Shown: piece by piece, positions 3,090 to 25,231 of the stretch | How positions within the stretch are numbered: the stretch's first letter is position 1 | How the letters are laid out: each line of letters begins with the position of its first letter | Assembly (NCBI RefSeq): GCF_026571515.1 | Contig: NW_026859119.1 | Coordinates: 248,001-312,000 of the forward strand | DNA from: Ruditapes philippinarum | Taxonomy: Eukaryota | Length of the DNA: 64,000 bases | Reading direction: 5' to 3' | Made by a program: the position numbers and the translations under genes | Notes under the pieces: model-generated | Seen by the model: only the letters and a program-made list of their open reading frames with translations | Database searches by the model: none | Told to the model about the DNA's origin: nothing

Positions 3090-5590
3090 CTCTTGTTCCT
3101 GGGTCGGGTGGGGGCTGCGTTCATTGAACGCCGCCTTTCCTTGATGATCTTGTTTATCATATTTTTTTAAAATTACAATGCTGGAGCGAAAACAAAGTGG
3201 ATCATACAACTAGCAATTTATGAAACACAATGGTACATCTTTAAGATTGATTATTTCTCGTAGATTTATTTTTCAAATTAATTTATCTATAGTTACTGTA
3301 AATTACTGGATTAAGAATTGATTACCGCTCAAGCCGGTGCTAGGGGGCGTTAGCGATGTTGCATTTATACATTATCCCTCATGTACAGACTCAATCAAAC
3401 CGAGGCTGCAATTCTTATGTTATTTTGTTGTGATTAATGCTTCCGAGGGATCACTTTGTTTCCAGAATTTTGCACTTATTCATTATTCCTCATGTACAGA
3501 CTCAATCAAATATGAAAAACAAGATCAACAAGGAAAGGCGGCGTTCAATGAACGCAACCCCCATATGACCCAGCAACAAGAACCAATGGCAAGGAGCCCA
3601 GGCGGACCCCAAATATAAAAAGGACAGGGCAATTTTTTGCTGCAACCGTGTCTGCAAAAACCGTGTCTGCAATTCTTGTGTTATTTTGTTGTGATTGATG
3701 CTTCCGAGGGATCACTTTGTTTCCAGAATTTTGTTGAAAGGAGTGCAAACGGTAGTACCCTACAGTACCGTCAATCAAACCGAGCCTGCAACATTTTCAA
3801 TAATGTTGTGTTCCCCTTTGTGGGCCTATTATTATTTTCTTAATCAGTTACGAATTATTTATCATTTAATGATTAACCTGTCCGTGCTCTGTCTTTGCCC
3901 TGTCCTGTTTTTGTTTGGGGTCCGCCTGGGCTCCTTACCATTGGTTCTTGTTGCTGGGTCATATGGGGGTTGCATTCATTGAACACTACCTTTCCTTGTT
4001 GATCTTGTTTATCATATTTTGGATTCAACATTTTTTGAAAAAAAAAAATCTGGAAACAAAGTGATCCCTCGGAAGCATTTATCACAACAAGATTTCAAGA
4101 GAATTGCAGACTCGGTTTGATTGAGTCTGTACATGAGGGGATAATGAATATGTGCAACTCCCTCACGTCCCCTAGCACCGGCTTGAGCGGTACTTAATTC
4201 TCAACACTTAATAGTGCTGGCATCAATGATCCCGAAGGACCAGAAAAATATAACAACACTGAAGTGAAGTACCGGGCAACTTTTAACGGCTGCCACACGG
4301 CACTTGACACTTGTTGTTGTGAAATATGATAAGCAAGATCAACAAGGAAAGGCGGCGTTCAATGAACGCAACCCCCACTAAAGTACAAAATTCTGGAAAC
4401 AAAATGATCCCTCGGAATAAATCATTTTGCAGTGACAATTGCTATGTTTAGTCCTTCGGGATCATTGATTCCAAAAAATAACAAGAATAAAGATCAACAA
4501 GGCAAAGGCAACGTTCACAGGACGCCTCCCCCGGCTTTACCCCAGCTTCAACTTTAAAGTGTTGAGAATTGAGTACCGCTCAACCCGGTGCTAGGGGGCG
4601 TGAGGGATGTTGCACGTATTCATTAACCCTCATGTACATACTCAATCAAACCGAGTCTGCAATTCTCTTGTTATTTTGTTGTGATTAATGCTTCCGATGG
4701 ATCACTTTCTTTCCAGAATTTTGAACTGGCGCTTGTTGCTGGGTCGGATGGGGGCTGCGTTCATTGAATGCCGCCTTTCCTTGTCGATCTTGTTTATCAT
4801 ATTATATTTCACAACTGCAGGCGTCAAGTGCCATGTGGCAGCCGTAAAAAGTTGCCCCGAACTTCACTTCAGTGTTGTTATATTTTCTGGTCCTTCGGGA
4901 TCATTGATGCCAACACTTTATTGTCTGGTCCTTCGGGATCATTGTAGCCAACACTTTAAAGTGTTGAGAATTGAGTACCGCTCAAGCCGCTAGCCGGTGC
5001 TAGGGGCCGTGAGGGATGTTGCACGTATTCATTATCCCTCATGTACAGACTCAATCAAACCGAGTCTGCAATTCTTATGTTATTTTGTTGTGATAAATGC
5101 TTCCGAGGGATAACTTTGTTTCCAGAATTTCGACCTTGAGCAGGGTCCTTGTATAAATTAACTGTCACTGCAAACTAATTGAATTGATGAATACAGAATC
5201 CCTAAAGAAGCCCAACACGGCAAAATTGAAAATGTTGCAGGCTCGGTTTGATTGAGCCTGTTCATGAACGGTACTGGAAAGTGCAAGTTACCGTCCACGC
5301 CCCCTAGCACCGGCTTAAGCAGAATTCAACATTGAAACATGAAATAGCAAAATTTTGAATTTAGAAACATCCGCAGATGTGTTCATACGGCGGTATGTCA
5401 TATCATGTCCTGTTTAAATGTTGAATTCATAAGCCGGTGATAGGGGGCGTGGACGGTAATTTGCACTTGACAGTACCGTCCATGCACAGGCTCAATTAAA
5501 AAAAAAGAGAGAGAGAAAAAAAAAACAAGAATAAAGATCAACTTGGCAAAGGCAACGTTCACAGGACGCCGCCCCAGGACACACCCAAGT
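3090..5590. repeat. Scrambled mosaic of 3-4 sequence modules in both orientations
   Basis: Module ccgctcaagccggtgctaggggg...tttccagaattt at about 3325(+), 4049-4190(-), 4576(+), 4978(+). Module aagatcaacaaggaaaggcggcgttcaatgaacgc at about 3090(-), 3520(+), 3895-4019(-), 4334(+), 4733(-). Long inverted pairs at 3511-3632/3895-4019 and about 4207-4377/4750-4920. Confidence 0.85.
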
Positions 5591-7169
5591 GGACACGAGG
5601 GCGAAATGAGCGGTTCACGCAATGCGAAACAATATAAACAAAAACAGGCCCACAGGATTTATGGAATTGTTATGAAGTAGGTAGGGGGCAAAAAAACTCG
5701 CATATCTTGCAGCAATAACCTCCTTTACATATACTGTAATAGAGCCAATCAAACCTGGCCTCATACTTTAAACAGGATATCAATTTTTTGCAACATTTCG
5801 CTGTAGACAGTTTAATTTCTTTTTCCGGTAAGATTTATTGTTGTGAGATATTTTCTTTCCTAGAAGAAAAGGGGAGCAACTCTTGCAACAGAAGTTTAAA
5901 ATACGTCGCTTTTTCTTAATATACGGATCTAAAATCGACGCGTCGTATGTTAAACTTCTTTTCGAGGATTTTCTCAGATTATAATAATGAAGGTGATGAT
6001 AATAATAATAATGATATTACTTCTGGAATACTGATTTGCATCATTTATCCGAAAAGTAGTACATGTAATTACCGGTATCTGCTCGTTAAAGAGCATGATT
6101 TCGATAAGTTTACATGGGAGTTGATAACAATTAGTCGTCCTTTTACAACAGACAATCGGACAATAAAACACAAATTGACAAATTTTGTCATAAAGCTAAG
6201 ATTGTTTCTGAATAAAAAAACTCAAAATGCAATATCATGTTTGCAATGAAATGCAGGGAGAGAAAAGATATACAACCATGTAGGCAAACAAAGAGACAGC
6301 CGGTAAACGAAAGACTGACATAAATACAGTAAACGGAGGGACAATAGTTTATCCTTAGACAAACAGAAAACCTGATTACCGTTGTATCGAAACCCTATAT
6401 CTTGTGTCTGTCCTTTTAATAATGCAACAACTACGAAAATGCACCTGTTGATACTCTTCAAAAAGATCAACGTAGGGTATGAAAAGAATTTCTTATTAAT
6501 TCGGTGTACAGAATACTCGTGGAAAAGGCATAACAATCAATGCATACCAGTATATGACTGTCTAATACACACACAATAATGTATAATATATGTAGTCAGG
6601 ACACTAGACAACTTTTGGGGACAGGTACCCATACCCTCAGAAAGGGGAATTTTGCATCATTTTAACACAAAAAGGGGAATTTTGAGTCGTATATAAGTTA
6701 TTTAGATCTAGGGTATTACACTTACTTTTAAGCACTATTTCCTACCATTAGGCCTACTTTCAATAGCTAGTATATCTTTTACTATAGACCTAACCAAATA
6801 AAAGATATAACATGAAGTTGTTCTTAAAGTATCTTTATTCTTCATTGTTTTGAATTTCTTATTACACTCAGGACAACTGACTCAGACATAAATTTTTCTA
6901 GACTTGGAAGTGAAATGATTAATGGCCCTCTCAAGTTGATTGTCACTCAGTGAAGTTGCTCCTTCATGAACAATTCTCATAATGTTATCAAGTGTTTCCT
7001 GGCTCATTGATGATCTGAGAGGAGTGCAAATACTGTTCATCAAAGAAAACACCCTCTCAACACAGGCTGTTGATGTTGGAATCAAACTGGACAGTAGCAC
7101 AAAGTAAGACATTACAGGGAAGGTTTGCTGTAATATAGGCTCATCAGTCAACTTCTTCAGCAGAAACTG

Positions 7170-7182
7170 CACTAACAAAGTT
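7170..7182 (+). repeat. Left TIR of RAG-like transposon (CACTAACAAAGTT)
   Basis: Starts with the RSS-heptamer-like CAC, preceded by TSD AACTG; exact reverse complement of 17079-17091. Confidence 0.95.
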
Positions 7183-7199
7183 CTATGCTCCTGCGTTTA

Positions 7200-7255
7200 T
7201 GAATAAATTATGCAAATGAGCCAGGTTGAGCCGCCATGTTAGAATTTCGGTAAGC
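7200..7255 (+). promoter_or_regulatory. Putative RAG1L promoter and non-coding first exon next to the left TIR
   Basis: Octamer ATGCAAAT at 7210-7217, YY1-like CCGCCATGTT at 7231-7240, splice donor GTAAGC at 7250, acceptor ttattatttcag at 7782 just before the ATG exon. Confidence 0.4.
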
Positions 7256-8706
7256 GTGTTGGAAATCGATACCTGTTCGTTTTGAAAGCTCGTCCTAACT
7301 TACAGTTTCCTTGAATGTAGGAAAACTTGGTTTTGTTTGATTGCATATTGAATGATAGGTATTACAAAATAAATATAATGAAAATCGATCAATAAATAAT
7401 TGTATACGAGCGTTATAAAGTCAATTTAATTCGTCAGAACAATAAGGTTCTGTTGCAGGGGTATCGGTAAAAAGACTCCTTTTTTTCCCCGTTTTTGAAT
7501 TTATTTGAACACGGATACAATTATTCTCAAACAGGTTTATGAATATACTTTACGTTGCAACCGAGTTTACCGTGTGTCCATTCCTTATTTAAATTGTCTG
7601 AGAAGTTAAATCTGTTTGTTTACATGTAAATGTGTACCGTCATTTTGACCGACTGGAATAAAAACTACCATGACGGTGATAATACCGGATATGTAATGAA
7701 AATTACACCGTGTAGTGCAAAGTTTTGGACATTTCAATTTAGCACAGTAGAGCTTGTGACATATGTTATTTTATTATTTCAGAAGAAAACAAATATGAGT
7801 GAAAAACAAATATGAGTGATTCCCCTGTTTTCAAGAGAAAGAAGCAGGAAGGGGTAAAAGTCTAATTTTTTTCATAATTTTATGTCAGAAATAGTTTTTA
7901 AGTTTCAGAATGGTATCGTTCTAGAAAGTTTTATTTTTTTACTTTCATTGTAACGGATATTAAGCGATGTACTTGAAAATGCAGTGAATAATTATGATTT
8001 ACTCAAATCAATGAGGCAATTTAATACTGCAAGCTGGTCCTGGAGTGTCTTATAGTACTGATTTTAAAATCAACTTTACAAGTAAGTTCTGTATGACAAG
8101 ATGCCCCTTACGCACCCCCCCCCCCCCAAAAAAAAAAAAAAAATAAAAAAAAATAACCCTCAAAGATGAGGCTCTAATGGGGTGTTGAAATGTAAAAAAA
8201 TGCTATTCGATCTCTTAGAAGGTTTATAAGAATTTGATTATGTTGGCACAAATAATCAACTTTGTAAATTCTCTAACAACTAAAAATTTAGAAACTGGAA
8301 TTTTACAAAAATGAGGTACTTCACGGGACATAGTTATTTTCTTACATTATTATATTTTAAAGAAAGTTCAGAATTGTTATTGTCTCAACTCAATGTACAC
8401 AACTAAGTTCTTTATAAATATACATTGAAGGAAAACAAATAATTTGAAGATGAGGCCCCATTGGGATGTTGAATTTTAAGTTTATTTTCTCTCAGACAGA
8501 CAGACACACACTCCAGGGTCCTTTCATTTCCAAGAATTTGCTTGCTGGGTTTTTAAATTGGTTAAAGGGAGTGCTTTACCTTTTATTTGCTACACTTTTG
8601 TTAATAAAGCCCAGTCAGGAAACCTCAACTGTACAGCTTATATCTTGCTGCTTGTACACACTTGTATTCGGAATTGTAGTACTGTATTATATAATCGCCT
8701 AACTAC

Positions 8707-8912
8707 TACTTTCAGTGCCTCGGTAGTAAATTAATCCACTTATTAAAGATGTTGTAGCTGATTCACTTTCGGGTTTGGGGAGGGACGAACTCAGAAATTT
8801 TGATAAGAATGCCAAACAGTATATTTTTTGATCTCACGGTGAAAAAACCTTCGAATGATTAAAATCTATGATGTTTGTAAAGACGACCAAGTCCAAAGGC
8901 ACTGAGAGTGTT
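8707..8912. mobile_element. Small MITE-like insertion in the RAG1L intron
   Basis: Inverted ends actttcagtgcct (about 8708) and aggcactgagagt (about 8897-8910). Confidence 0.35.
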
Positions 8913-10770
8913 ACTATAATCACATTTACTATACTTGCTTTTGTGTAACTAGTAAATTAACATTAACTTTTAATACAAGGTGACGGACTCCGGTACATCA
9001 TTTTACTATTAAATGCACTGTTCAGATATCACTTATTCGAACTGATGTTATAACTTATTTCTAAATGTGACATCACCAATACGAATCTAGATATATCCCA
9101 TTCGAACAGGTGATAAATTGTATCCCTTTGAATGGCTTATAATACCTAATCATATTGATGATATCACACATAAGAATTAGCGTGATCATTTATTCAAATG
9201 GAACCACATATCTGTATAGATAATATACCCAGTACGATTACATGAGCTTAGCTTTTACAAATGTTGAAGTCATCTACTCGAAAATATCATTTATAGAGAC
9301 ATATGTATTATTTCACCCATTTTGAATTGGTGATATCCCGTATTTACATTGGTGATATAACAAAGGTGCATTTGGTAGTAAAAACAAGGCCCCATAATTG
9401 GCACGCTGTATATAATATATTCTTGCTTCCATTTTAATACACTTAACACAGTGTGCTCCTTTGTAATCATAGTGTCTCAACTTATAAAAATTGTGCTGCA
9501 GGTGAAAGGATTCATATTATCTATGCTTCTCTAATGTAATCTTGCATTATGAATGTCTAGTGTCATAGTTCAAATGATTTGAAAGGCTAAGTCTATCTGG
9601 GCAATTGAAGAAAAGATTAATGGCTATTATATAACAAGCCGATATTTGTTGTAAGTTGCTTTGTTTTATTTTCTAAGCCGAAATGTGTAGAGACACATGT
9701 AATGTTTTCTAGACTTAAACTGATCAGGTCATTTGAACTATTTAGTGCTTTGCTAGTTCTAGAGGTTATCCAAAAATTTATTTTTCATAGCTGGCTGTTT
9801 AACAAGACTCCCCCGAGCAAGAGTGTCTTCGTTCATCTCAAGATTTATTTGCCAGTAGCCCACCAGAGTCTGAGCCTCTTCATTCTTCCCAAGACTTTTT
9901 TGAATCAAGTTTAGAAGAGCCTTTGCCTGAACCCTCTGATCCTATGTGGCAAAACTATATAGATCCCAATAAGGGAGATTTTAATTACATAGAATCTCCA
10001 GTTCACTCGTCAACTAACACAGTCGTTCAAGATAACGAACTAGTTGAAAAGTGTAAACAGTTAGAAATTTGCAATGAAGATCTTCGCCGCGAAAATGAGA
10101 AACTTAAAACAGAAAATGTAAATCTTAAAACCGAAATAAAAAAAATTGGAGAAAAAATGCAATGCAGATTTGGTAGAGAAGAAAACTTAAAATTGAAAGA
10201 AAAGGTGGAAGAACTAACATTTATACTAAATTTGCAAAGTGATACACAAAGTTCTACACAATGAATGTACGTGAAGATAAAGATGAGATTCATCCAAAGT
10301 CACTCTGTTCGAGCTGTAGAATTAGATTTTACAAATTTAGGCAAATGGTGCAAAAAAAGAGAGAATTTTTCTTCCACCTTTCCAACAGTGTATAATTTTT
10401 TGTATGCACAGTGAAAAAATGTACTTTCTGTAAAAGTAAATCTAAAAGCAAACTTTTATCACGTTGCTCCCAAGATATTTTTTGCAGGTTCGTGCATTCT
10501 TGCAATGGTTTGACAACTGCTAATGTCTGTCCAGTATGTAGGGTGTTACATAACAGCGGAGGATGTTGTACCTTTGACAGGTCAACTGCTATTACTATAT
10601 GAAACCATGACAGTGACATGTAAATATACCGGCTGTTCCTGTATTTCAAACATAAACACATTTCAAAAACCACGAAGAAGTGTGTAGGTTTTGGTAAATA
10701 CCCAGCTCTTTTCCCCAGCTCTTCTAAAAGTGCGACTGCTGTTCCGAAAATACCCATTTATGACTGTTCT

Positions 10771-10974
10771 TTTTTTTGTTTGTTTGTTTTGGGTTTTAAC
10801 TGGTGGAGGAAGACCTCAGGTGCCCTTCCGTGCATTATTTCAGGCACGAACGGGCACCTGAGTAGAACCACCGACGTTCCGTAAGCTAGCTGGATAGCTT
10901 CCTCACATGAAAGAATCCAAAGTCCCTGTCGGGATTCGAACCCACAGCGGTGAAGGGCAAGTGGTTTGAAGTCA
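10771..10974 (-). mobile_element. 5'-truncated tRNA-derived SINE inserted in RAG1L
   Basis: 11-bp TSD ATGACTGTTCT at 10760-10770 and 10975-10985, B-box GGTTCGAATCC on the minus strand, (AAAC)n tail. Removal restores KIPIYDCSNKYLKQRRLKGL. Confidence 0.92.
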
Positions 10975-13865
10975 ATGACTGTTCTAATAAGTATTTAAAA
11001 CAGAGACGCCTTAAAGGTTTAAATGATTTGGTAACAACATTTTGTCAAACAAATAAAGAGGATAAAGGCGACGCACTGTTTTTCATGTTACAACAGCATT
11101 TGAAAGACAGTAATGACGTCCGATTTAATGACATAAATGATATATGTAAATCAACTGATTCGAAACTGACCCCAAGCCAGTGCCTTGCTTTGAGAGTCGA
11201 TACGCTTCAAAGTAAAACTCAATATAAAGCCCAATACAATTTCTTGAAGAAAAATGTTCGCAATCCTTTACAACCTCCAAGTGTTATCGACGATGTAGAA
11301 CTGTTATACACACCAAGTTCAACGCGTTATAGCATCGAAGGGTTCGATTTCACGGACAACTACTATCACACACCAGCAAAGGCAGTATATAAAACAGACT
11401 ACGCATGTAAATATACTTCATTTGAGCCACTTGATGTTTTGCAAGACTTTGATCGATTACTGCCAGAATTTGCATCGCCTAACATAAAAGGTGTTCGATG
11501 GTGCTACCCTGATGCGATAGCTGGTACTTTGAAAGAGCTTGAACCGAAAATTGTATCTGGTCTGAAGAAAAATAATATTGACCCAAACGATCCTAAAATT
11601 TTATTGATAACAAACATTAAAGATGGTGGTGATGGTCTCGGTGACGTGTCAATTCATAAGGAATTATCCGACCGGTTCTTGCCTGACAAAGCATTTAGAT
11701 TTTCTTTCTGTATTTTTAAAATTGAGGCTGCGGTTGGCGACAATGAACCAGTTGAAATTTTCCTAGAGGAAAAGCCAAATTCTGTTTAGAACTAATCGGC
11801 CTCTGTTAGAAGCAATATGCGACGAAAGCAATAGAGCTTCAAGCTTGGCGTGTCTTTTGCCGATTGAAAATGAAAGGTCCTTCATGAAAGATAAAATAAT
11901 GAGAGTACAACATACTAATGGATGGCGAAGACATTGTCTAAAATTTTTCAATAGTATGATTGACGAAAAGTTGGACAGGAAAGAGAGCGGTTTAGCAGAA
12001 AGTTGTTCAAGATACCTTTGCACACTTTGTGAAGCCACCACATTAAGCGCGGTTAAGGACCTTGGCACTTTCAAAATTACAAGAACGTACGATGAAACTA
12101 AAGAAATCGCGGAATATATGAGGGTAAATCCTGATAACCTTTCGCACGCGGCAATTGACAAGATTTCCAAGGAGTAAAAAAGGGCCCCTCTTTTAAAAGC
12201 TGAAGCGATTGAAAAGTGTTTAGATGCAACTCATGCTGACATAAACCTAGGGTCTTTTTCAAAAAGGTTTTGGTAAGGGAAGTTGCATGCATCACCCAGT
12301 GGGAAGCTACTGCGGACGTAAAGCCAATAATTAAAGACAGTGAGGTTAAATTTGATATGCATTTAAAAAAATACTATTGGCATAAACCCAGAGTTAATGA
12401 TGCCAGGTAATTATGCCAGGGTATTGTTTGATGAAAAAAATGAATCAAAAATACTTGCTTATATCACAGATGGAGAAAGAAGGAAACATTTGTCAAGCGT
12501 GCTGCAGAAATTTAGACTCATGAGGAAAGTGTACCGGGCTAAAGACCCAAAGAAGGAATGTCCTGGGGATGTATCCTCATACAAAGTTACAGCTATAGAA
12601 ATGGGCAGACTACTTCTGGCACATTTTGAATATGCTTCTTGGCCTAATTACCTACACAAAGTAATCGAACATGTTCAAGAAATAATTGAAAGCACAGATG
12701 GTCCAGGTACAGTAGGTGGTATAAGCAGCGAAGGGAATGAGTGTGGGAACAAGATTTTCAGACATATGCGGAAAAACATGGCAAGAAAGGGAAACACTCA
12801 AGGTGGTCTAAGGGACGTGTTGTGGTGTCACTGGCTTTACAGTAGTCCAGAACTTACAAGTCTTGCTTTAGTAACATTGAAACAGTCTAGATGTAGTTTG
12901 TGTTTGGAGGTTGGTCATAACAGACGTACTTGCGCGATGAACACAGTCTTTCCTGATGTTACTGTTCAAATTTGAGTGGCTATTTGTGAACTGCTATTAG
13001 TTGTCAAAAATATTAAAAGAGGTATCGAAAGTAATGTGTAAAATTTTAAGCATATTTTCATTAAAAATGACATTACCAATAACTGGAAACTGTGTACTTA
13101 GTTTAAATATAGGGGATATTGAAAAAGTAAGTAAAACATGTCTAGTACTCATTTTATTTAACTATGTAGCCATAGTAACCTTAATATTAACACTTGTGGT
13201 GGTTTGGTGTGGCTTGCATGAAAGCTAGCTAATATGCTTATATCCCAGGAGGAATAAGCAGACGTTTTTCTTTATCTCGTTTTTCTTATAATTATTCCAC
13301 TATATCATCAATATCATATAATGCATGTCTTGTTTCAGTAATATGTATTCGCTAAATATTTTGTGTAATCACTATAAAACATGTATGTACCCTTGTTCAG
13401 TTGGCTAATTTCTTACGAGATGATACGCGTGGTCTAGGTTGATATCTGTTATTCTGTTGAAATAAGCTGAAACAAATTGTAAAAACTACTTTTTGTGTCG
13501 CCTTTTCTGCGAAATTGCTGATAAATTCAGATGTTAAAAATAAGCAAAATATTTGGTTCATTCATTTACTGGTTTATCATAAATATACCATACTAAGTAG
13601 TTCAGCTTCGTTTATCAAAGTAAATGTTTTCAACCTAACAATAGCATAACGGTGGTGCAGATAGTATACAAGTATTAAAAAAGAAGTAAATGTTGTGTGC
13701 GCACTCAATTTATGTGCACATAATGCTGTAACATGTGCAAAAAAAATAATATTGCATCATGCATGCTACTTCTATATACCAGTAATTACTTATATGCATG
13801 TGCTACCGTATAATCACTGTATATATTAAATAAATTGTTATGGTTCATTTCATTTCTTTGTTGTC

Positions 13866-16281
13866 CTATTTCAATGTTTTCCTTTTTCTACCTTGACTTT
13901 TGCAAGTAGAGCATACATATTTCCCTTTAGGGACACCTTTTTCCAGGAGACCAACACAAAACTGGTGTAACCATCGTTTACATTTGCTTTCACACTGAAC
14001 CCATGCTATAGGTGAAATTTCTGGAGAGTCAGATATACAACATTCATCATTTAAGTCACATGGGCTAGGTCTCAATGGTTTGGTTGTATATGCAAATATT
14101 GTCTCCAGAACTCCTCCAACAACCATAATGCAGTCATCTGACAAAGTAAAACTTGAATTCCCAGCAGTACAGTACATAATATCTAACTCTGTACTCTCAA
14201 TACTCAACGACTGTAAGTCAATAGCATATAATTTGTTGCTGGCTGTTGGGGGATCCGTAATCTCTGCTTCCTTTTGAACAAACCCACCTGTGATATAGAG
14301 TATGTTATTAAATGAAACGACACTTTGATACGAAATAAATATGTCTTCTGGAATTGAAGCAGATATCTTATCTAGACTGTATCTACGCTCAGCTACACCA
14401 TGAAGTTTCAATATGACAAGTTCACTTAATGGAAGTCTTAGTCTTTCCGACGGTGAAGACTCTACCCCTTTGAATGACACACCTCCTGTTATGATCACAC
14501 ATCGTGTCCCTGAAATTGTAGCAATGTTGGCAGTATGGTAGGCTCTAGGCATTACATCCGGAATATCTCTGATTTTTGTCCAGCGGAGTGTTCTTGAATC
14601 AAACTCATAGAATGAACCGTCGTTGCAAACTTGAGAAAACGGACTGGCAAGACCAGGTTTATGTCGGTTGGGAAGAGATAATCCGCCATGCATCACTATA
14701 ACATTTTCACTCAACTGTGTAACGGTATGTCCAGTTCTGCCAACTGGTATATCTCCATTCTGTACTAATTTACTTAATGAAGTTTTTCCGGCAGGTTGAC
14801 AAATTGTACACTGATATTTGTTCCTAATAAAATCCAACTTGATAAGTTCATTGCTGGTTTCAAATGTGTCTGTATTTAATCCACCCATACAAAAACGGTG
14901 CGTGTGTCATACCATGCACTAACAGACTGTAAGCTTGGAAAATGGGCCCCCATTATGTTATCGAATCGCTGTATACTGCTGATATACGCATCATCAGGGT
15001 CATGGTTGAATGTCATATGAAATAAATCGTGTCCAAATTTCCATTCGGTTTCCTGAACTTTACGAGCACCACCAAAATATAGGAAAGTGGATTCACTGTC
15101 ATTAGACTTTAGTTTTATGCAACAGTGTCCTTCAGGGGGAAAGTAGTCATTATTTTGTAAATTTAGTTCGATTCTCTTTCTAATTGCTTTACCTTTTGTA
15201 GAAGATTTTGATTTAAATGGGAGAATCTAATTCCCCGGAAATAATTATTAACCTTTCAAATATAAAAAAGGCATCAAATTCACCTGAATATTTCAAAGAG
15301 AAGTTTCTAGCAATTAAGGAAGAACATGAAGATTTTATACATATTTATACGGACGGTTCAAAAGAAGGTTGCAAAGTAGGTGCGGCTGTGTTTGAAAATA
15401 ACTTTACATCTAGTATGAGGTTACCAGATAATGCATCAATTTTTACTGCTGAAGCAAAAGCTATCGATTTAGCATTGTCATACATAGCACAGCATACCCA
15501 CGATAAATTTGTGATATTTTCTGACTCGCTTTCTGTTTTAATATCCATTAAAAATAAAAAATCTGACAATATCATGGTAAAGAAACTTCTTTTGCGATTT
15601 CATGATATACTAAAAACAAAATATGTTAAATTATATTGGATTCCAAGCCATGTAGGAATACGAGGAAATGAAAAAGTAGATGCTTTAGTTAAACAATCAT
15701 TAAATTTTCAAAAAACTGACTTATTGTTACCTGCTTGTGATTTTAGACCGGCTATAAATAAACTCGTATCATCTGAATGGAAAGCAAATTGGGACAGTGC
15801 CGTTTTTAATAAACTTCACGATATAAACCCATCTCTTGATATGTCACCATCTCTATCTCTGTCAAACCGCCGTGATCAAACAGTTCTTCTTCGATGCCGA
15901 ATTGGACACACTAAAATTACCCACTCTTATCTTCTCACAAATGAAAATGCCCCTTTCTGTGTAGGTTGTAATGAAAATTTTACTGTCAAGCATTTTCTTC
16001 TTGAATGTCATGATTTTTCACAGGCCCGTAATAGATATTATTCTGTAAATTCACTCAAAGAACTTTTTAATACAATTCCATCAAAAAACATAATTGATTA
16101 TTTAAAAGAGATAAACTTGTATTCTAGGATCTAATGGGCTCATTTTTATTGTCATTTACAATGTTTTACATAATATTCTAAGCCTATTATAGCATTCGGC
16201 ACGATATGGCCAGTTATGTGTTGACGTGCCGTATAATCCAAACAAACAAACAAACCTCCAATCGGAATCTGCAAATGCCAT
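13866..16281 (-). pseudogene. RAG2L: RAG2-like protein (kelch propeller plus PHD finger), interrupted by a LINE and a 1-bp frameshift
   Basis: ATG at 16281 (MAFADSDWR) resumes at 15227 (ILPFK...DYFPPEGHCC...FLYFGGAR...VFVW), with a frameshift at about 14885 into GGLN. Kelch blades: GRTGHT..VMHGGL, PRAYHT..IITGGV, LYITGGF, MVVGG. PHD: PCDLNDEC...WVQCESKCKRWLHQFCVG...YVCSTC. Convergent with RAG1L. Confidence 0.92.
15228..16254 (+). mobile_element. 5'-truncated I-group (Nimb-like) LINE: RNase H domain, CCHC-like motif and 3' tail, inserted in RAG2L
   Basis: ORF 15217-16134 has YTDGSK, AEAKAI, FSDSLS, WIPSHVGIRGNEKVD and CVGC...TVKHFLLEC. The 3' UTR has a stem cggcacg/cgtgccg and an (AAAC)n tail. 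RAG2L codons rejoin across it. Confidence 0.92.
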
Positions 16282-16938
16282 GTTTCTCTAAAATTGTAAA
16301 AAGTTTACATTTATTAGATTATTTATTGTGACACAAGTTCCTTAATTCATACAAATTTATTTATTCTCAATTTCGAAATGATTCGTACAACTTTTATTAA
16401 TCGCTGTTAAGACTCGTTCCACATAGAATCAACCTCGAAAAAAGATAGGAGGCAACGTTTAATTATCGATATTGTTATGTCTTTCTTTAGAACACATGGC
16501 TATTTTTGCGATCAAACACATGTTAAAAATATTTCATGCACTTTCCGGGGTATGTTGACCCAAGTTATGTGGTTTTAACCAGTACTCCATGTATAATCAC
16601 CAAAGTTACAGGGAATTTTTGTACTACATCTAGATTAATTGGGCTTAGACTATTAAACAAACATATAATTTCAACTACTGCTGAAATGATCTCCAAATTT
16701 ATAATCCTGTTTATTGCGCATATATAGTCTGTTATGCAACTTCCCAGAAGGATATACTCGTATACGGAAAGTAACAATTTCTTTATCGCTTAACTACGTA
16801 TCTTTCATATAATTAAGACTAAAAGGAAATCAATCTTGATAGAAGATATACACGTTCTTAGGTCCCGAAATATTACCCCTGCAAATGGTGTGCATATTTC
16901 TACATACAAATTAATAATATCTTAAAATTAACACTTAC

Positions 16939-17078
16939 GTTGCTTGTCAGCAAAATTGAAACCGAAAGTAGCGGTTGTTCTAAAATTTAATCGAGTAAAA
17001 TGGGTGGGATTTAACCACCGCGCATGCCCTGTGCGAACGTATTGTTTACATCCGGTCGTAGCATAGGGTAAGAGTGCA
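16939..17078 (-). promoter_or_regulatory. Putative RAG2L promoter and non-coding first exon inside the right TIR
   Basis: Minus-strand donor GTAAGT at 16938 and acceptor tttacaattttag at 16288, 6 nt upstream of the RAG2L ATG. Confidence 0.45.
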
Positions 17079-17091
17079 AACTTTGTTAGTG
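17079..17091 (-). repeat. Right TIR of RAG-like transposon (AACTTTGTTAGTG on +)
   Basis: Exact reverse complement of 7170-7182, followed by TSD AACTG at 17092-17096. Confidence 0.95.
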
Positions 17092-20000
17092 AACTGTGGG
17101 TCTGATAAATCTGTTTCAGATGCCCTCTGCCTAAAAAGATATAGATTAAAACAGTTGGTCAGAGAGAAAGTTGCAGAATAGCTTTTTTTTAACTTGAAAT
17201 TCTATCAATATTAATGATAACATACAAAATATACCCCCATATTATATAAAAATTATACTAGAAATGTTATAAAACTAAAATGTTAATGCAAAAATTTCTG
17301 GATTCATCATTGTATTTAAACATAATAATTAATTTTATAATATTATCACTAGAAGCTTAAGATCTATATTAACATACTATATATGCAAAGACTTGTTCTC
17401 TAATCATAAAAAGGATATTTACACTGCTCATCATCTATGAGCCAGGAAACCAATGGCCATACAATTATTATGCATGATATGAATACAAATACACTCAGTA
17501 ACACTCACCTTGATAAGGGCCAGTGGCCATTTCACCTAAGTTCCTATGACTAGCAAAAAGTTCTAACATAAGAACTGATCAACATAAACTTCTGAAATAA
17601 CAAAAAAAGAATAAACAAAAATGCAACATTTCAATAGAAAATAAAAACTTACCAAACAAGAAAATGTGAAAATCCTTTGCTTCTGTATGTTTATTCAGAG
17701 TGAAAAGTATATAAAAGAACACTGTAGAAAATTAACTGGCTAACAATAAATAACACAAAATAACTATTTAAACTTTGATATTGCTTCAAATGAAACTGAC
17801 CAGACCACTTACTTCATTATAAACATCTGATGCTTAAAAGCACTGAACTCTCTTCTGATGATCTCTGCTGGAAATTCTGGCTGAGCAACAACATGATGTC
17901 CCATGAAAGTGTCCTGTTTCGCCTCACCATAGTGATCAGCAATGTGGCTAATAGAGGTCTATATCAAATGAAATTATGTGAAATAATTGTATTGCTTTGT
18001 GATTGAATAAATGGGTTCTAAACTCTATAAATAAAAGTTGAAAAAATTACTATTAGTATGAAAACTGAATATTCTTGATTATATTAAAATATATATTATT
18101 TGGAAAACAACAACTTTACAATTAAGTAAAACATGTTATCTATTTATTTATACCTGTCCATAGTCGCCCAATTCAAGGGGATTTGAAGGTACATGTCTCA
18201 TATCAAACACAGAGAAAGCACCTAAAGCTGGACTACAATGAAATGCATCTTCGAGCTCCTGTATCAAACTGTACACCATCGGCCTGGCAACTTCTTCTGC
18301 GAACTGTTGAATAGTGATTGGCCCTTCATCCCTGAAAAATCCAAAGATCATGCTTATGATGAAAAGACAAATATAACTTGTTCATAAACAGTTTAGTTTC
18401 ATTAAATTACAAATTACTTAGTTTTAATTCTGACAGTCACTTCAATTGTAATAAATAAAATCATGTCTAACAAGACTGTCTGAAATAATAACTATAAGTT
18501 TTTAATTTTTTGGTACAGTTATAAACCTTAAGTCTCTAAAGAAATTATGTTATATAATGAACTTTTTTACCTTAGCCTTCTTGCAAGTTCTCTCCTCTCA
18601 TCTATCAGATCCCATATCATTGGCAGTTTGGAGAAATAAAGTTCTTCATCATGCACACAATCACCAACTTGAGTTAATCTATTACTCAGATTTTCAAGTT
18701 CATCTATGAGGTTCTGAAGTTATAAACTTAAGGTTGATAATGTAACTGAAAATGTAAAGTCTATAAGAGAATGCATATCCATTTATATCTATTCAATTAA
18801 AAAAAATGTTTTAATGGAGTAATTGTCAAACATAACTTGATTCAATCGTAATTTGTAACTGTACATTTCTTTGTTGGCATTTAGTTATGTGATATGTATA
18901 TATGTACATCAATAGCCAAGTCAGAATGATAATTAAATTTGTGTGAAGATTTGACAGTAGTGCTTAACAAAGACAGGCATATTTTTGTTGAAATACTTAC
19001 TCTCATTTTCACGTGAAAAGTGAACATCACCTTGTAAGTAGTCACTGAATATGACAATGGGCTTCAGCATATCACATAGGGAAGCTGCTGCTGCTGCTAT
19101 TGTATGTTTGTTAAGTAGCATCTCCCTTAATCCGACTACTTCAGGGCTTCTTGATTAAGTCAATATGGAATCTATCGCATCAATTATGGGTTCATATCTA
19201 TCAAGGAGGCGGCTGCAAGCCCTTCCATGGGATAACCACCTTGTAGCTGCAGCTCTCAAAAACGTCAGCTTTGTCATGTTGTAGGCCTCCTGGACTTCCA
19301 TAAAGACCTGAAAATTTTATTTTTTGTAAAAATTCACTGATGGATCATGCAGGTATTGATTTAGTTAATAGATCTAAATGATTTCACATGAATACAATTG
19401 GCAGCTTGAATTTTTTAGAATTTAATCAATGTCATCATAATGACATTAACTTCCTTTTTTTTCATATTTCAAGTACAATATATAACATATTTTGCCTGAA
19501 AAAGTTTTTTTTTGTTTGAAATATCCGACAATTTATTATTATAATTTCATCTTGTATTCAAAACATGTCATTTAGTGACCAGTCACCTTAAATTATAATT
19601 GCATCTGATTTTACAATTTATTTTTTTCGGTTATTACACAAGCAAACAGTAGATTTAACATTCAAATTTAATTAATGGGTGAGCCTGATTGTTGGTAGGA
19701 CACTACTAAGTCTACTTACAGCAAATCTTTGGGCCGAAAATTTGAACAATTTCCAGATGGCAATCAGCACGGCATCTAGGTCTGAAAGAACTGGGTATTG
19801 CTTGACAAGATGACTTACACACAAGGCAAGTCTATGATTTCTGCAGTTAATGTAGAGTTGAAATGGGACCACATGTCTGAATCTGCGCTGTAATCCTGTG
19901 GATAAATTATAAAATAATATTCTAAAATACAGTATAAATACCAATGTCTTTATTTATTTAATTACTTTCATTACTGTAATAATGAATGTATTTACATTAA

Positions 20001-21672
20001 TGCCTTTATATTTTTATTAAAATAAAATAGTGTTATGATAAAAAATCTGATAGTTTAATGATGTCCTCTTACCTTTGTTGACCCCACTCATAACATTACA
20101 GCCATCAAAGCCTACAAAAATGGCTTTTTTGATATCGATTCCCTTGCCTTGAAGAAACCGTTCAATGGCTTCCATCAAACTTGCTGCATCAGTAGACACC
20201 ACTTGAATGATCCCAACAAAAACATCTGCCACTTGCTTTCCCTTTAGAAGTTTGATTATTACTGCAAATTGTTCTCGATTAGACTCATCGGTTGATTCGT
20301 CAGCCATTAGAGCATAGCATTTGGCATCACGGATTTGTTTAAGGATCTCATCTTCAAATGCAAATGCAATTGATTTGACAATGTCCTGGATAGAAGATGG
20401 AGAAGTGTAAGTCAACTTAGGATTTTCATTCACATACTGTTTTACCATTTCATTTTTTATATCAGAAGCCAAGAAGTTCTTGATAAAATCCTCAAGGTTG
20501 TCAGTGAGTGCCCATCTTTTCCTAAGCATGAAATGTGAAGTACGGAACAAGGTCTCCAAATATGTTTTGTTCAATGCCTTTTTACTTTCAACTTGTTTTG
20601 CCAATAATGGAAAAATCTTCTGTGTACCTTTAATTGATTTGGAAAGGTAGCTTTCTGAAGCCTTTAAGTGCTTCTCAGACTGGTCATGAGTTTTTAGACG
20701 TCTTGCTGGATGAGTGCCTAACTTAACTCCACGTGAAATATAAGCAGTTGTCTCATCAGCCAATGAACTACTATACATGAATTCACAGTACTTGCAGCAA
20801 TAACCTTCTTTGGATGCGCTGTAGTAAAGCCATTTGAAAGTCTTTTCATATTTATTGGTATCAAACAGTCGATTGTCAGGCACCATTACACATGCTTTTT
20901 TACTTGTACATATATCGGACCCATTGTCTGAATCATCAGCACTAGAAGTAGAATCATGAGAATGGGAGTCAACTAATACTGCTTTACGTTTTGGTGATTC
21001 TTTTTTAGAGACTGTAGTTGATGTTGTGATTTCAGACAAAGATAATGCATGCTGCTTAAATAAATTGTCAATTTTCTTACACTTTTCTGATGTTTTTGAC
21101 GTTATTCTTTTTGGCTTGCAGCCACGGCTGCAAGCCCATTTGTTTTGGAAAACTTGTTCCGGTTAGGTGGTTTCCTGCTTACATTTGTTAGTGCATGATT
21201 GAACGAGAAACCAACTGCAATCGTGCCAATCGCAACTTTTTGGCCCTTTCCGTCACTCTTCGGTTTAATGATTATAGCCGATGTAGTTCCGATTGCAATC
21301 GTGACAATTCGGGCGATTCCGTCATACTGCGGAATCAGACGAAGTAATATTACGGAAATCTAAGCTATTTTAGTTACTTCGGTAATCCCAGTTTGTTTAT
21401 ATAAATAGGATTTCTATTTTTACTTGATTTATCGGTTTAAACCGTAATAAATTATAAACGAAATTGTTACGTTTCAATTCTTTTTCAAGACGCAAAAGTT
21501 AGTTTCTTTTATAATTGTTTTTGTCTGTATTAGTTTTGTATATTAATTAACATAAATACCTTATACAATAGAGGATGGTTACGTCTCCAAAGGGTGGTCT
21601 TGCTTACCAAATCACAGAGAATATTAGTGCATGATCGAGTTATATTTAGATCTAATGAACGCAGTGAGGTAA

Positions 21673-22058
21673 GTAATAGAAAGAGCACCGAAACACGAGG
21701 CTATCTGATTTGTACGAGGGGGCGTAGCCCCGGAGTATAAATCAGATTGCCGAGTGTTTTGGTGTTCTTTCTCTTTTGTATCATAGTCAAACATGACAGC
21801 ACGTTCCCTGTTGTCATAATATGAAACCCCAGAAAAAATGAACCAATTAACGAGCATTTGAATAATGATATTTCTGCCCATTTCCCTTTCTCTGACGTCA
21901 CAATAAGTAAACCCCAGCAAAAAGGAACCAATCAACGGGCATTATCTGGAGTGCGGGTAACTGATACCCGCACTCCAGTTACCGCACTGTGCATGTATAT
22001 GTATACGATTTAACTCTGAGACTTTTTCAACAGAAAGGTCCCCAAACTATGATACAAT
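21673..22058 (+). repeat. Dispersed repeat of about 380 bp, copy 1
   Basis: gaaagagca..gaaacacgagg.tatctgatttgtac...caacagaaaggtccccaaactatg is shared with 62106-62478. Confidence 0.85.
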
Positions 22059-22848
22059 CTAAAAATAGCCCATGCATATCAATAACCTTACCGTATCTGT
22101 GGTTGTGTAACATAGTTGATACATGCTTATTAATTGGTACCACGTAACGAAGTATTTTAGTGCATTTACTTGTCCATAAAGATGCTATATAAATGAAATT
22201 AGCAACTGCCAAAACGAATGATTTCTCTGGAAATGAAATGTTCACACTTGTTTCCTTTTCAGTATGATAGAATAGTTAGTATTTTTATTTTCTTTACAAG
22301 TTTTATACAATAGAGAATAGATTTCAAATTGTTTTGACAAAAAATATTCGTTTTTACAAAAAAAACAAAAAAACTAAACAAACACTTTATGAAGGCACAA
22401 CTGTGCAAGCCTTTCCTTTTAAAACGAAACTTTATTTAGTAGTGGTTTTGATTGTGCGACATTTTACTTCGCCACGGTAATATCCGAAAACTCCAAACGT
22501 ATAACTATCGCAAAGGTAAAAGCCGAAAATTCCAAATGTATTCCTACCTGATCAGTTACGATTAATTTCATTGGACATGAGAAAATAAGGGGAGGTAACT
22601 AGTGAAGAAATATAATATGGCTTCGTACTCAAAATTGTTTGTAACCAAAGTAATTACTAACATTTTCGTTTTTTGTTTTGTTTTTTTTGAGGGGAATTTT
22701 TTTCTGAAATAGGGGAAAAAAACATATGATCTTGAGAGGGGAATGGGGCCGATATTCGGCCCCAAAAATGGAAAAACGAGTGCCCTGATAGTGAACAATA
22801 GGCATTTTGTTGTTCTAATGTACACAATCGTTGAGTACTGTAGTAACA

Positions 22849-23270
22849 ATGGTTGGTAAAAGTGTTGACTTAAAAGAAGAAATGCGGACCTACATAATTT
22901 TTTGTACAAAGCTTTGTCAATATTTGATATTTGCAGACCTTTCTGATATTTACACAACCTTGAATGTGACACAGCTAACACAGTTTGCAGATGAAACACA
23001 AGTCTGAGAAATTGAAAATGCACCAACATTAGGAAGTCGACAGTGTGCATCTTGTGCCGAAATTTATTATAAGTTAAAGATATTGTTAGAAGAGGTGCTA
23101 GATATTCACTTCACGATATTGCACACATTGTTGGTATTTCACGATCGAGTGTACTCTTTAATCTAAAAAGAATATCTTGAAATATAGATCCTTGCAAGAT
23201 TGATGCCTCATTTATTGTAGTCAATAAAAAGTAATAATAGCCAAACATTTTCTGAAAATATTTCCAAAAA
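22849..23270 (+). pseudogene. Degenerate mariner transposase N-terminal fragment
   Basis: MVGKSVDLKEEMRTYI...IIKVKDIVRRGARYSLHDIAHIVGISRSSVLFNLKRI (HTH region), with stops and frameshifts. Confidence 0.6.
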
Positions 23271-25231
23271 GTAAATTGGCAAATATATAGTATTGTATTT
23301 TGTTTCTTTTCTAAACTTACAGATACAAGCACTTAGATCGTCATTTTACAGTATCTTACAAGTACTTCTCTTGTACCATTAATGCAATTTCAATGAAACT
23401 TTACAGGATTAATCTGTAGCTCGAGTCTTTACGCATATTGCACGGTTTTTCCGGTTGAATGATTTTTGGCCGAGTTATAGACGAGTTTGATAATAAGGTG
23501 TTTTTTTCTGTGTTGCCAGGAACACAAAAGCTTGTCCGGACAACTCCTCATAAACTACTTGTGCAATTTTATCCAAACTTTACAGGAATGATCAGTACCA
23601 AGTCTAGTTGTGCACTGTCTGTCCGTCTGTCACAAAACTTGTCTCAACATGAAATTTGCCATCCTTAGGCGACACATGTGATCACTGATCGCTCTTGTTT
23701 TCTCTTTTTTTTTTCTTCACCTTTTTTATAGTTTCTGCATAGATGTCTTTATGTACACAGCATGATAAATGGATCACTTAAACAATAAGGGAAATAAGTC
23801 AATGTTACAAAATGATCGAAATTGGCAATTATGGTAATTGATATTTGATAGTACATATCGGTAGAACAACGGGGTCAGGACAAGCTACCCAGATGACATT
23901 AACGTACAAACGCTCAAGAGACATAATTGTAGAGAACAGCGTTTTCCGTTTCAATTGGCATAAAAAGGTTTCGTGTAGACACAAACTTCCGTGTCATTAA
24001 CTTTACTATTAATTGAAAATTCTCGTGCAGACAGGACATAAGAAATGCGTATATTAGTAAAGAAGGAATTTTTGACATCAGACATTGTTAATAGAACTGA
24101 CGACATATTGCCAATTACTTTTAGGTTGATAAACAAAGCAAATGAAAATATAAGTACACAGGTTGTGTTGTTTGTTATACTAATCTGTAACGTTATACAA
24201 GATAAACAATATAAACTTAAAAGGCCGTGAAAAAAATAAGCAAACGGAAAATCATTGTATCAGTCATCCTAATTTTAAAAAAATATTAAAGAATGTTTAC
24301 AAATAAAAACTTTGGGATAGTGATAGCTTTGGTTTAACAATAAAGGATCATGTCAAGGTCATTACCAATGAATTAACAAGAATAAAAGTCATCATTTCAT
24401 TCAATATGATTTATTGTTGCTGAAAATTGTTTGTATGAAAGAATTTAAAAGTTCAAAGGATTGTTTGTCACAAAGCCTAATTGTGCATACTCTCTAGATT
24501 TTGCAATTGATTTTTTATTGTACTGTTATGGTCCCGAATTGTCAATTTTAGAGTAAAGTAAGTTTGTCCGTGCTTCGCCACCAAAAACCGCTTGGGGATT
24601 CCAGTGAAACTTCATAGGATTGTTTTTCGCCATACCTGCTTAAATATGCTGGATATAATGTTGCGTTTTTCTTTTGCTGTATTTAAAACTTGAAAATTGT
24701 GTGCGCAAGGATGACATCTTTATTTTTATACATTTTTTAGCGATTGCGTTTTGTTATTTTTCGTGATCTCACAAATACGAAAATAGAAAGGGTGCGGTTT
24801 TAAATAATGAAAAGGCATACATTGTTGATAAAACAATGACAAGGTTAGCTTTTAAAAAAGCTAGTAGCGACTCGCTTCGTAATTTCTTTCCAGGGGCGTG
24901 TTTTTATGTAAAAATGACAGTTCTGTTAGCTGAAAAGACTTCAGCGAACATCAAAATAAAAGTTACATATAAAGTTAAGGAAGCCAGCTCTCTCACTTTA
25001 ACAAAGAGGAATATGAGTATATATGAAGATGCATGTAAACAGATAGAGTGAAGTCCCTATGTCTATGCACATTTACCATATGGCCTGTTGACCTTGACCA
25101 GAAAAAAAATAGATAAGTAGAATTCATAAAAATGTCTCTTTATACGAAGTTAAGTTGTAGTATGTTATTTAGTATTGGAATAAATTGCAGATACAAGTCC
25201 TAAAGTAAACACAAGTTGTCAATCAATTCAG

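What the first reader, a model, noticed from the sequence alone, without database searches (positions are those of the whole stretch)
6882..17130. Insertion site is readable: excising the RAG element restores an open hAT exon
Deleting 7170-17091 plus one AACTG copy joins the minus-strand exon ag|GCAGAGGGCATCT...GACCCACAGTT to TCTGCTGAAGAAG. This gives (FIMK)QRASETDLSDPQFLLKKLTDEPILQQTFPVMSYFVLLSSLIPTSTACVERVFS, in frame with the upstream exon. It independently confirms both boundaries and shows a true transposition event that split an exon in two. That is the same type of event proposed for the origin of split antigen-receptor genes (analogy only).
Basis: seen in the sequence. Interest (0 to 1): 0.8.

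Follow-up and report, generated by a model that had tools for sequence, protein, structure and literature searches.

The report
RAG-like transposon splitting a hAT-like exon
A 9.9-kb jumping gene of the family that gave vertebrates their antibody-gene recombinase sits inside a coding exon of another transposase-like gene, and related gene copies show what the site looked like before; the case is clear, but this kind of element and this kind of proof are already known.

Summary
The element at 7170-17091 (9,922 bp) has perfect 13-bp inverted ends that start with CAC. It is flanked by a direct AACTG repeat at 7165-7169 and 17092-17096. It carries convergent RAG1-like and RAG2-like genes.

On the minus strand, both AACTG copies sit in the same codon phase of one reading frame:
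- The 12 codons before the element read QRASETDLSDPQ.
- The 95 codons after it read QFLLKK... to a stop.
- The upstream exon ends AA|gtaagt and the split exon starts ag|G, so the frame is continuous.

Three independent checks confirm the boundaries:
- A sister long copy on another contig stops matching exactly at 7170 and 17091, and has a different 5-bp duplication.
- 24 of 27 short (~740 bp) deletion derivatives have the same ends and their own perfect 5-bp duplications.
- Paralogues of the host gene run through the site uninterrupted with a single pentamer equivalent. One reads ...DDPQFLL...

No empty allele was found in four public runs or in the assembly. This copy is not brand new: it is about 98% identical to its sister, its RAG1-like frame is interrupted, and it holds a nested retroelement fragment. 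RAG-like transposons with 5-bp duplications in protostomes, and empty-site proofs, are already published. I rate it a new member of a known kind. The same stretch was also noted elsewhere in this scan.

The parts
6882..7169 (-). 3' piece of the split last coding exon of the hAT-like host gene: 95 codons plus the stop at 6882-6884. It includes the hAT C-terminal dimerisation domain.
   Evidence: Translation. Pfam PF05699, E 4.1e-05, 23.7 bits against a cut-off of 21.4.
7165..7169 (.). Left copy of the 5-bp target site duplication, AACTG
   Evidence: read directly
7170..17091 (+). RAG-like (RAGL) transposon, 9,922 bp
   Evidence: Homology with the sister copy on C11980 begins at 7170 and ends at 17091. 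TIRs. Genes.
7170..7182 (+). Left terminal inverted repeat, CACTAACAAAGTT
7170..7739 (+). Left part of the element that is kept in the ~740-bp non-autonomous derivatives
   Evidence: In one search the high-depth block spans 7170 to about 7780, and the X6 loose end at 7739 continues with letters of 16924-16942. Short copies.
10911..12975 (+). RAG1-like core coding region, read in three open pieces (10911-11786, 11767-12174, 12367-12972) separated by frame changes
   Evidence: Pfam PF12940 hits at E 2.5e-18, 2e-11 and 5.3e-27. Best solved relative is 6b40_A at 8e-48. Frames; indels against the sister copy.
13866..14888 (-). RAG2-like gene (kelch repeats plus a PHD finger), convergent with RAG1L
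   Evidence: 6b40_M at 1.9e-27.
15228..16255 (+). Nested 5'-truncated retroelement fragment with an RNase H ORF and an AAAC-repeat tail. It is absent from the sister copy.
   Evidence: Pfam RNase_H at 1.7e-12.
16924..17091 (+). Right part of the element that is kept in the short derivatives
   Evidence: (matches over query 223-392) and the loose end at 7739
17079..17091 (-). Right terminal inverted repeat
17092..17096 (.). Right copy of the 5-bp target site duplication, AACTG
17092..17130 (-). 5' piece of the split exon: G, then 12 codons QRASETDLSDPQ, then TT. The acceptor AG is at 17132-17131.
17813..17958 (-). Upstream host exon, ending ...FIM AA|gtaagt
20017..21039 (-). Large 5' coding exon of the host gene, with a DUF4371 domain
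   Evidence: Pfam PF14291 at 7.2e-15.

Best explanation
A RAG-like (ProtoRAG-type) DNA transposon integrated by cut-and-paste into the last coding exon of a hAT-transposase-like gene on the minus strand.

Inferred mechanism: the RAG1L/RAG2L transposase binds the CAC-initiated ends and joins them to target DNA with a 5-bp stagger. Repair of the stagger duplicated AACTG. The hit fell inside the codons CAG TTT (Q-F), about 16 residues upstream of the part of the hAT dimerisation domain that Pfam recognises.

Shown consequence: the host frame now runs into the element and stops after 15 foreign codons, so the dimerisation domain is cut off.

The element belongs to a family with three long copies and at least several dozen ~740-bp internal-deletion derivatives in this genome. 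All have the same ends and each has its own 5-bp duplication, so the family has transposed many times. This copy is no longer pristine: it is about 98% identical to its sister, its RAG1L frame is interrupted, and it carries a nested retroelement fragment.

Shown: ends, duplication, frame continuity, the pre-insertion state inferred from paralogues, and the multi-copy family. Inferred: the enzymology, and that the host gene was functional when hit.
For: - TIR and TSD read directly. The 13-mer is found only at the two ends, with 0.24 expected.
- RAG1 Pfam hits on three + strand pieces, and a kelch+PHD RAG2-like ORF on the - strand.
- The closest solved structures are the amphioxus RAG1L and RAG2L of entry 6b40: 8e-48 against about 1e-24 for vertebrate RAG1, and 1.9e-27 for RAG2L.
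- The two exon pieces are in the same phase, and the splice signals are in frame.
- The sister copy on C11980 aligns from exactly 7170 to exactly 17091 at 97.5-98.3% and is flanked by CAATA on both sides.
- 24 of 27 unique short copies have perfect 5-bp duplications, all different apart from one that is also AACTG.
- Paralogues C2332 and C797 are uninterrupted, with the same spacing and one pentamer equivalent.
- Reading on into the element gives a stop after 15 codons.
- In run X15, a 115-letter contig with no differences covers 7080-7194 across the left junction.
- The ends fit the published protostome consensus CACTWMCAAACKTYKBB except at position 11 (passage of PMC7204232).
Against: - No empty allele was seen. 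Only the window itself and the 73% paralogue match the left flank in the assembly. Among the loose ends listed for four runs, none leaves the flank at 7169; 29 loose ends were not shown, and contigs cannot show absence.
- The X15 junction contig has only 25 letters inside the element, below the tool's 31-letter rule for bridging.
- The right junction was not checked with reads.
- The paralogue evidence comes from copies 57-73% identical, not from an allele. C3020 has two extra codons upstream of the site.
- The RAG1L frame of this copy is interrupted, so the copy may not be autonomous. Assembly indel errors could also explain the interruptions.
Confidence: 0.93

Rival explanations
1. The insertion is real, but the target was already a dead hAT relic (pseudogene or immobile transposon remnant). 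On this reading no working exon was split, and the open frame is simply not yet decayed.
For: The nearest DNA paralogue, on C2332, is full of stops. No hAT-type inverted ends were found around the host gene. The family is low-copy and diverged, with the best relatives at 73%, 61% and 57%. No expression data were obtained.
Against: All eight putative exon segments are open. The one donor and one acceptor I inspected are canonical. The intron position before the last exon appears to be shared with paralogue C797, whose exon also follows ttttcag. The 95-codon and 340-codon pieces have no stops.
Confidence: 0.3
2. The arrangement is an assembly artefact: a chimeric join or a collapsed repeat at the abundant short-copy ends. 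On this reading the long element does not really lie between these two exon pieces.
For: The element ends are repeated at least dozens of times, which invites misassembly. The window differs from all four runs laid at some positions, for example 6928.
Against: An artefact would not produce a 5-bp duplication in matching codon phase at both ends. The X15 contig crosses the left junction without any difference. The window's left part is closer to the sister long copy (98.6%) than to the short copies (median 95.5%).
Confidence: 0.02
3. A short non-autonomous copy inserted here first, and was later converted into a long copy by recombination or gene conversion with a long element elsewhere.
For: Short copies far outnumber long ones: 118 and 110 first-look candidates for the two ends, against 3 long copies. 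One short copy has the same AACTG duplication at another site.
Against: The terminal 570 bp of this copy is 98.6% identical to the sister long copy, against 94.7-96.6% to the 27 short copies. Nothing calls for the extra step.
Confidence: 0.02

Closest known systems
Protostome RAGL transposons (oysters C. virginica and P. imbricata, nemertean N. geniculatus), Martin et al. 2020, PMC7204232 (passages read)
   Same: The layout TSD-TIR-RAG1L-RAG2L-TIR-TSD, convergent genes, CAC-initiated ends close to the published consensus, 5-bp duplications, and the existence of non-autonomous derivatives.
   Different: That paper speaks of 'a small number' of non-autonomous pairs. Here the two ends give 118 and 110 first-look candidates, of which 40 each were scored and all matched. 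The paper's text has no mention of 'inserted into', 'empty site' or 'MITE' (0 occurrences each).
Amphioxus ProtoRAG (BbeRAG1L/BbeRAG2L, PDB 6b40)
   Same: It is the best solved relative of both proteins. From recall of the 2016 description, which I did not read here, it has the same gene pair, CAC ends and 5-bp duplication.
   Different: It comes from a different phylum-level lineage. The ends share only the terminal letters.
RAGL-A of the acorn worm Ptychodera flava, Martin et al. 2023, PMC10629977 (passages read)
   Same: [quoted passage not shown]
   Different: There the empty sites are alleles or populations of the same locus. Here they are diverged paralogues, and no empty allele was found. 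The proteins here are closer to the ProtoRAG type than to vertebrate RAG.
The hypothetical insertion of a RAG transposon into a receptor-gene exon at the origin of V(D)J recombination
   Same: A RAG-family element with heptamer-like ends interrupts a coding exon with a 5-bp duplication.
   Different: The host is a transposase-like gene, not an immunoglobulin-domain receptor. Nothing suggests somatic excision or rejoining. This is an analogy only.

Membership tests
RAGL (RAG-like) transposon | A RAG1-like gene with the RAG1 recombinase core | tested here: met
   Pfam PF12940 on three pieces, covering profile positions 24-272, 294-392 and 473-624 of 653. 6b40_A at 8e-48.
RAGL (RAG-like) transposon | An adjacent RAG2-like gene (kelch propeller, with or without a PHD finger) in convergent orientation | tested here: met
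   ORF 13866-14888 on the - strand with kelch families and PHD. 6b40_M at 1.9e-27. RAG1L lies on the + strand upstream.
RAGL (RAG-like) transposon | Terminal inverted repeats beginning with CAC (heptamer-like) | tested here: met
   13 of 13 bases paired, CACTAACAAAGTT. The same ends are seen in 27 short copies and one long copy.
RAGL (RAG-like) transposon | A 5-bp target site duplication | tested here: met
   AACTG here, CAATA at the sister copy, and 24 of 27 short copies perfect.
RAGL (RAG-like) transposon | An uninterrupted RAG1L reading frame with the catalytic acidic residues (an autonomous copy) | tested here: inconclusive
   The frame changes near 11785, between 12174 and 12255, and near 12365. 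The sister copy has other private indels. Assembly errors are not excluded. I did not map the catalytic residues.
RAGL (RAG-like) transposon | Transposition activity of the encoded proteins on these ends | not testable with these tools
   Only indirect evidence: many copies with individual duplications.
hAT superfamily (host gene) | The C-terminal hAT dimerisation domain | tested here: met
   PF05699 at 23.7 bits against a cut-off of 21.4 on the 3' piece. The same domain is found in three paralogues.
hAT superfamily (host gene) | The transposase body upstream (DUF4371 / RNase H-like region) | tested here: met
   PF14291 at 7.2e-15 on the 340-aa exon. The other exon pieces gave no Pfam hit.
hAT superfamily (host gene) | A mobile element with short TIRs and an 8-bp target duplication | tested here: not met
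   Between 5500-6890 and 21000-24000 there is no inverted match of 10 or more bases other than short, mostly A-rich strings of 10-12 bases. So I call it hAT-like, not a hAT transposon.

The most novel reading that the evidence does not exclude
This RAGL family is still mobile in a protostome, and the insertion in the hAT-like exon is polymorphic in the population. Filled and empty alleles, and perhaps excision footprints, could then be caught in nature. Together with its abundant ~740-bp derivatives as ready-made substrates, this would be a natural system for watching a RAG-type element enter and leave a coding exon, the step assumed at the origin of split antigen-receptor genes.
Probability: 0.12. 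Interest if true: 0.6.

Novelty: new member of a known kind. Interest (0 to 1): 0.35.

Why it matters
It is a textbook-clean example of RAG-family transposition in an invertebrate: exact ends, a 5-bp duplication, and a pre-insertion state that can be read from paralogues at codon resolution. It also comes with a sizeable family of short derivatives and a few long copies, which shows repeated mobilisation. That makes this genome a candidate for population or bench studies of RAG-like transposition. It does not change what is known: such elements, their duplications and empty-site proofs are already published for protostomes and deuterostomes. Hitting an exon is also what any cut-and-paste element occasionally does.

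Tried and rejected
- **Empty allele in the assembly.** The 320-bp left flank matches only itself and one 73% paralogue, so there is no alternative haplotig.
- **Empty allele in public runs.** Four contig runs from four samples were laid on 6300-8000. No listed loose end leaves the flank at 7169. One junction contig was found in X15 only. Contigs cannot show absence, 29 loose ends and 442 pieces were not shown, and the single call allowed did not cover the right junction.
- **Empty allele as a predicted protein.** The 95-aa piece found 1 protein among 4 candidates. It is 53% identical and starts downstream of the site, so it is not informative.
- **Pfam across the site.** In the window piece and in three paralogues, the hAT dimerisation match starts at profile position 28. 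The site lies upstream of the recognised part, so the domain model cannot be used to show restoration.
- **MAFFT with the 12-aa piece.** It misplaced the piece on a similar LSD.Q string further down. I relied on the DNA alignment and direct reading instead.
- **hAT ends around the host gene.** None were found.
- **Literature search for the end sequence.** It gave 13 papers, of which 10 were listed. All 10 are unrelated by title and look like primer matches.
- **Organism.** Not determined; run and genome names are coded.
- **Odd joint in reads.** A joint from 7826 back to 6576 with 10 letters between appears in three runs. A similarity search between 6500-6760 and the element found nothing. It remains unexplained.
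Full report
**What is in the sequence.** At 7165-7182 the + strand reads AACTG followed by CACTAACAAAGTT. At 17079-17096 it reads the reverse complement of that 13-mer followed by AACTG. The two 13-mers pair perfectly, and similarity between the ends falls off after that. The 13-mer, with up to one mismatch allowed, occurs only at these two places in the 64-kb window, against 0.24 expected. The bases next to the pentamers differ, so the direct repeat is exactly 5 bp.

Between the ends lie several open pieces:
- Three pieces on the + strand match Pfam RAG1 at profile positions 24-272, 294-392 and 473-624 (E 2.5e-18, 2e-11, 5.3e-27).
- A 340-codon ORF on the - strand has kelch repeats and a PHD finger, so it is RAG2-like and convergent with RAG1L.
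- An RNase H ORF lies at 15217-16134.

The closest solved structures are the amphioxus RAG1L and RAG2L of entry 6b40. RAG1L scores 8e-48, against about 1e-24 for vertebrate RAG1, and RAG2L scores 1.9e-27.

**The split exon.** On the minus strand, 17129-17092 reads QRASETDLSDPQ plus two bases. 7169-6882 reads QFLLKKLTDEPILQQTFPVMSYFVLLSSLIPTSTACVERVFS... to a stop. That piece carries the hAT dimerisation domain. In both pieces the pentamer, CAGTT in gene sense, starts a codon.

The exon begins after tttttag at 17130.

Further upstream on the same strand there are six more open segments, among them a 340-codon one with DUF4371. As it stands, the host frame runs into the element and stops after 15 codons. 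All of this rests on the pieces read separately.

**Independent tests of the boundaries.** Each end of the element is repeated in the window's own genome. The first 431 bases give 118 first-look candidates; 40 were scored, and all matched at 94-100%. The last 392 bases give 110 candidates; 40 were scored, and all matched.

A second long copy lies on contig C11980. Aligned with 70 bases of flank on each side of the window copy, homology starts at exactly 7170 and ends at exactly 17091, at 97.5-98.3% identity. That copy is flanked by CAATA on both sides.

Most other copies are short, 663-759 bp. In the fetched loci I found 27 unique complete ones, and 24 of the 27 have a perfect 5-bp duplication of their own. 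The three exceptions are:
- the two members of a tandem pair on C10559, whose outer flanks share TGCTA;
- one copy with a damaged right end.

The short copies are deletion derivatives of the long element. Read depth is high from 7170 to about 7780, and a contig that leaves the window at 7739 continues with the letters of 16924-16942.

The short copies are 94.7-99.5% identical to each other, with a median of 96.7% over 351 pairs. The window's left part is 98.6% identical to the sister long copy and 94.7-96.6% identical to the short ones. DNA of the RAG1L and RAG2L genes of this family is found at three places plus one contig end.

**The pre-insertion site.** The host is low-copy. Its last-exon DNA matches one other place, contig C2332, at 73%. 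That copy runs through the site without a gap. The left and right flanks of the window overlap on the same five columns of it, AACGC in that copy. It is itself a decayed pseudogene.

At protein level the 95-residue piece has 58 matches at E of 0.01 or better. I fetched four of them:
- C797 reads ...ATPEQVDDPQFLLRAIIEDD... across the site, with one CAATT where the window has CAGTT, and its exon also follows ttttcag.
- C3020 begins QRAL... and is continuous, but it has two more codons before the conserved part and one TGA.
- C5755 and C12694 are more distant and also continuous.

**What I could not show.** I found no empty allele, despite three attempts:
- The assembly has no second haplotype of this locus.
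- In four public runs from four samples, all of them contigs, no listed loose end leaves the flank at 7169. One 115-letter contig of X15 covers 7080-7194 without a difference, which argues that the insertion is present in that sample too. However, it has only 25 letters inside the element, below the tool's 31-letter rule. In addition, 29 loose ends and 442 pieces were not shown.
- A protein search with the 95-residue piece found one 53% relative that starts after the site.

The right junction was not tested with reads. One run that holds the stretch is labelled as a marine sediment metagenome.

**State of this copy.** The RAG1-like frame changes near 11785, between 12174 and 12255, and near 12365. 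Compared with the sister copy, these are private single- or two-base indels, and the sister has its own. They may be real decay or assembly errors.

The window copy also holds 1,028 bases (15228-16255) that the sister lacks. This stretch is an RNase H ORF followed by an AAAC-repeat tail, which I read as a 5'-truncated retroelement that landed about 340 bp upstream of the RAG2-like start.

The insertion is therefore not brand new, and this copy may depend on transposase supplied by another copy.

**Mechanism.** Shown: the ends, the 5-bp duplication, repeated independent insertions of the family, and the truncation of the host frame.

Inferred from established knowledge of RAG, ProtoRAG and Transib (recalled, plus passages of PMC7204232): RAG1L/RAG2L bind the CAC ends, excise the element, and integrate it with a 5-bp stagger. 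By the same knowledge, real excision would leave an imprecisely repaired footprint. 'Restoring the exon' is therefore a reconstruction of the past, not a forecast.

**Comparison with what is known.**
- Martin et al. 2020 (PMC7204232; abstract start and passages) describe protostome RAGL transposons with the same layout, 5-bp duplications, the consensus end CACTWMCAAACKTYKBB, and a small number of non-autonomous pairs. The ends here fit that consensus except at position 11.
- Martin et al. 2023 (PMC10629977; passages) show empty sites with a single copy of the duplication for RAGL-A in an acorn worm.
- The 2022 Natl Sci Rev paper (PMC9435367; passages) reports insertion differences between cultures of an alga.

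Element type and style of proof are thus both known. What this case adds is an exon hit readable at codon level and a comparatively large family of short derivatives. Searches for 'RAG1L' with 'non-autonomous' (3 papers) and 'ProtoRAG' with 'MITE' (5 papers) turned up no paper whose title or abstract start points to such a family in a protostome. I did not read those papers. Supplements, where TIR lists sit, were closed.

The host is hAT-like by its domains, but I found no hAT ends around it, so I do not file it as a mobile hAT.

**Earlier notes of this scan.** They list the same stretch as a complete RAGL transposon, and list other CAC/5-bp elements in this genome. The follow-up report on the same stretch was withheld.

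**Verdict.** It is a new member of a known kind, of moderate to low interest.

Noticed in passing
window 7170-7739 and 16924-17091; loci L035-L072: The long element has a family of ~740-bp internal-deletion derivatives. The two ends give 118 and 110 first-look candidates. 27 unique complete copies were examined; their pairwise identity has a median of 96.7%.
   Followed up: yes
L038/L039 (G000:C10559, about 204650-205832): Two short copies lie head to tail, separated by 5 bases (CAACG), and the pair as a whole is flanked by TGCTA on both sides. It looks as if a dimer had transposed as one unit using its outer ends.
   Followed up: partly
window 15228-16255: A nested 5'-truncated retroelement fragment (RNase H ORF, AAAC-repeat tail) that is absent from the sister copy. 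It lies about 340 bp upstream of the RAG2-like start codon.
   Followed up: yes
window 11785, 11996-12011, 12174-12255, 12365, 12472: The two long copies differ by private 1-4-base indels inside the RAG1-like coding region, so each reads in several frames. This could be real decay or assembly error.
   Followed up: partly
window 7183-7189 and 17060-17066: After the shared 13-mer, both ends carry CTATGCT. It follows directly at the left end but comes 12 bases later at the right end (seen in the alignment).
   Followed up: no
window 6994-7014 and 17430-17450: A 21-nt inverted repeat, 95% complementary. One arm is in the host's last exon and the other is in the intron upstream. 17279-17500 also has a 90% match on contig C15149.
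   Followed up: no
window 17191-17260: A repeat of about 60-70 bp with 564 first-look candidates in the genome. It often occurs as adjacent inverted pairs.
   Followed up: no
window 6585-6698: A short block of very high read depth just downstream of the host gene's stop, so probably another repeat. Contigs of three runs join 7826 back to 6576 with 10 other letters between. No similarity between the two places was found.
   Followed up: partly
window 6928, 7867, 7921, 7930, 7967: All four runs laid carry a different letter from the window at these places. The cause could be an assembly error, a rare allele, or, inside the element, reads from sister copies.
   Followed up: no
G000 contig pairs C5755/C12439, C11149/C13018, C4032/C14146, C13974/C11460: Pairs of matches have identical scores, and one pair has identical flanks. 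This suggests uncollapsed haplotigs in the assembly.
   Followed up: no
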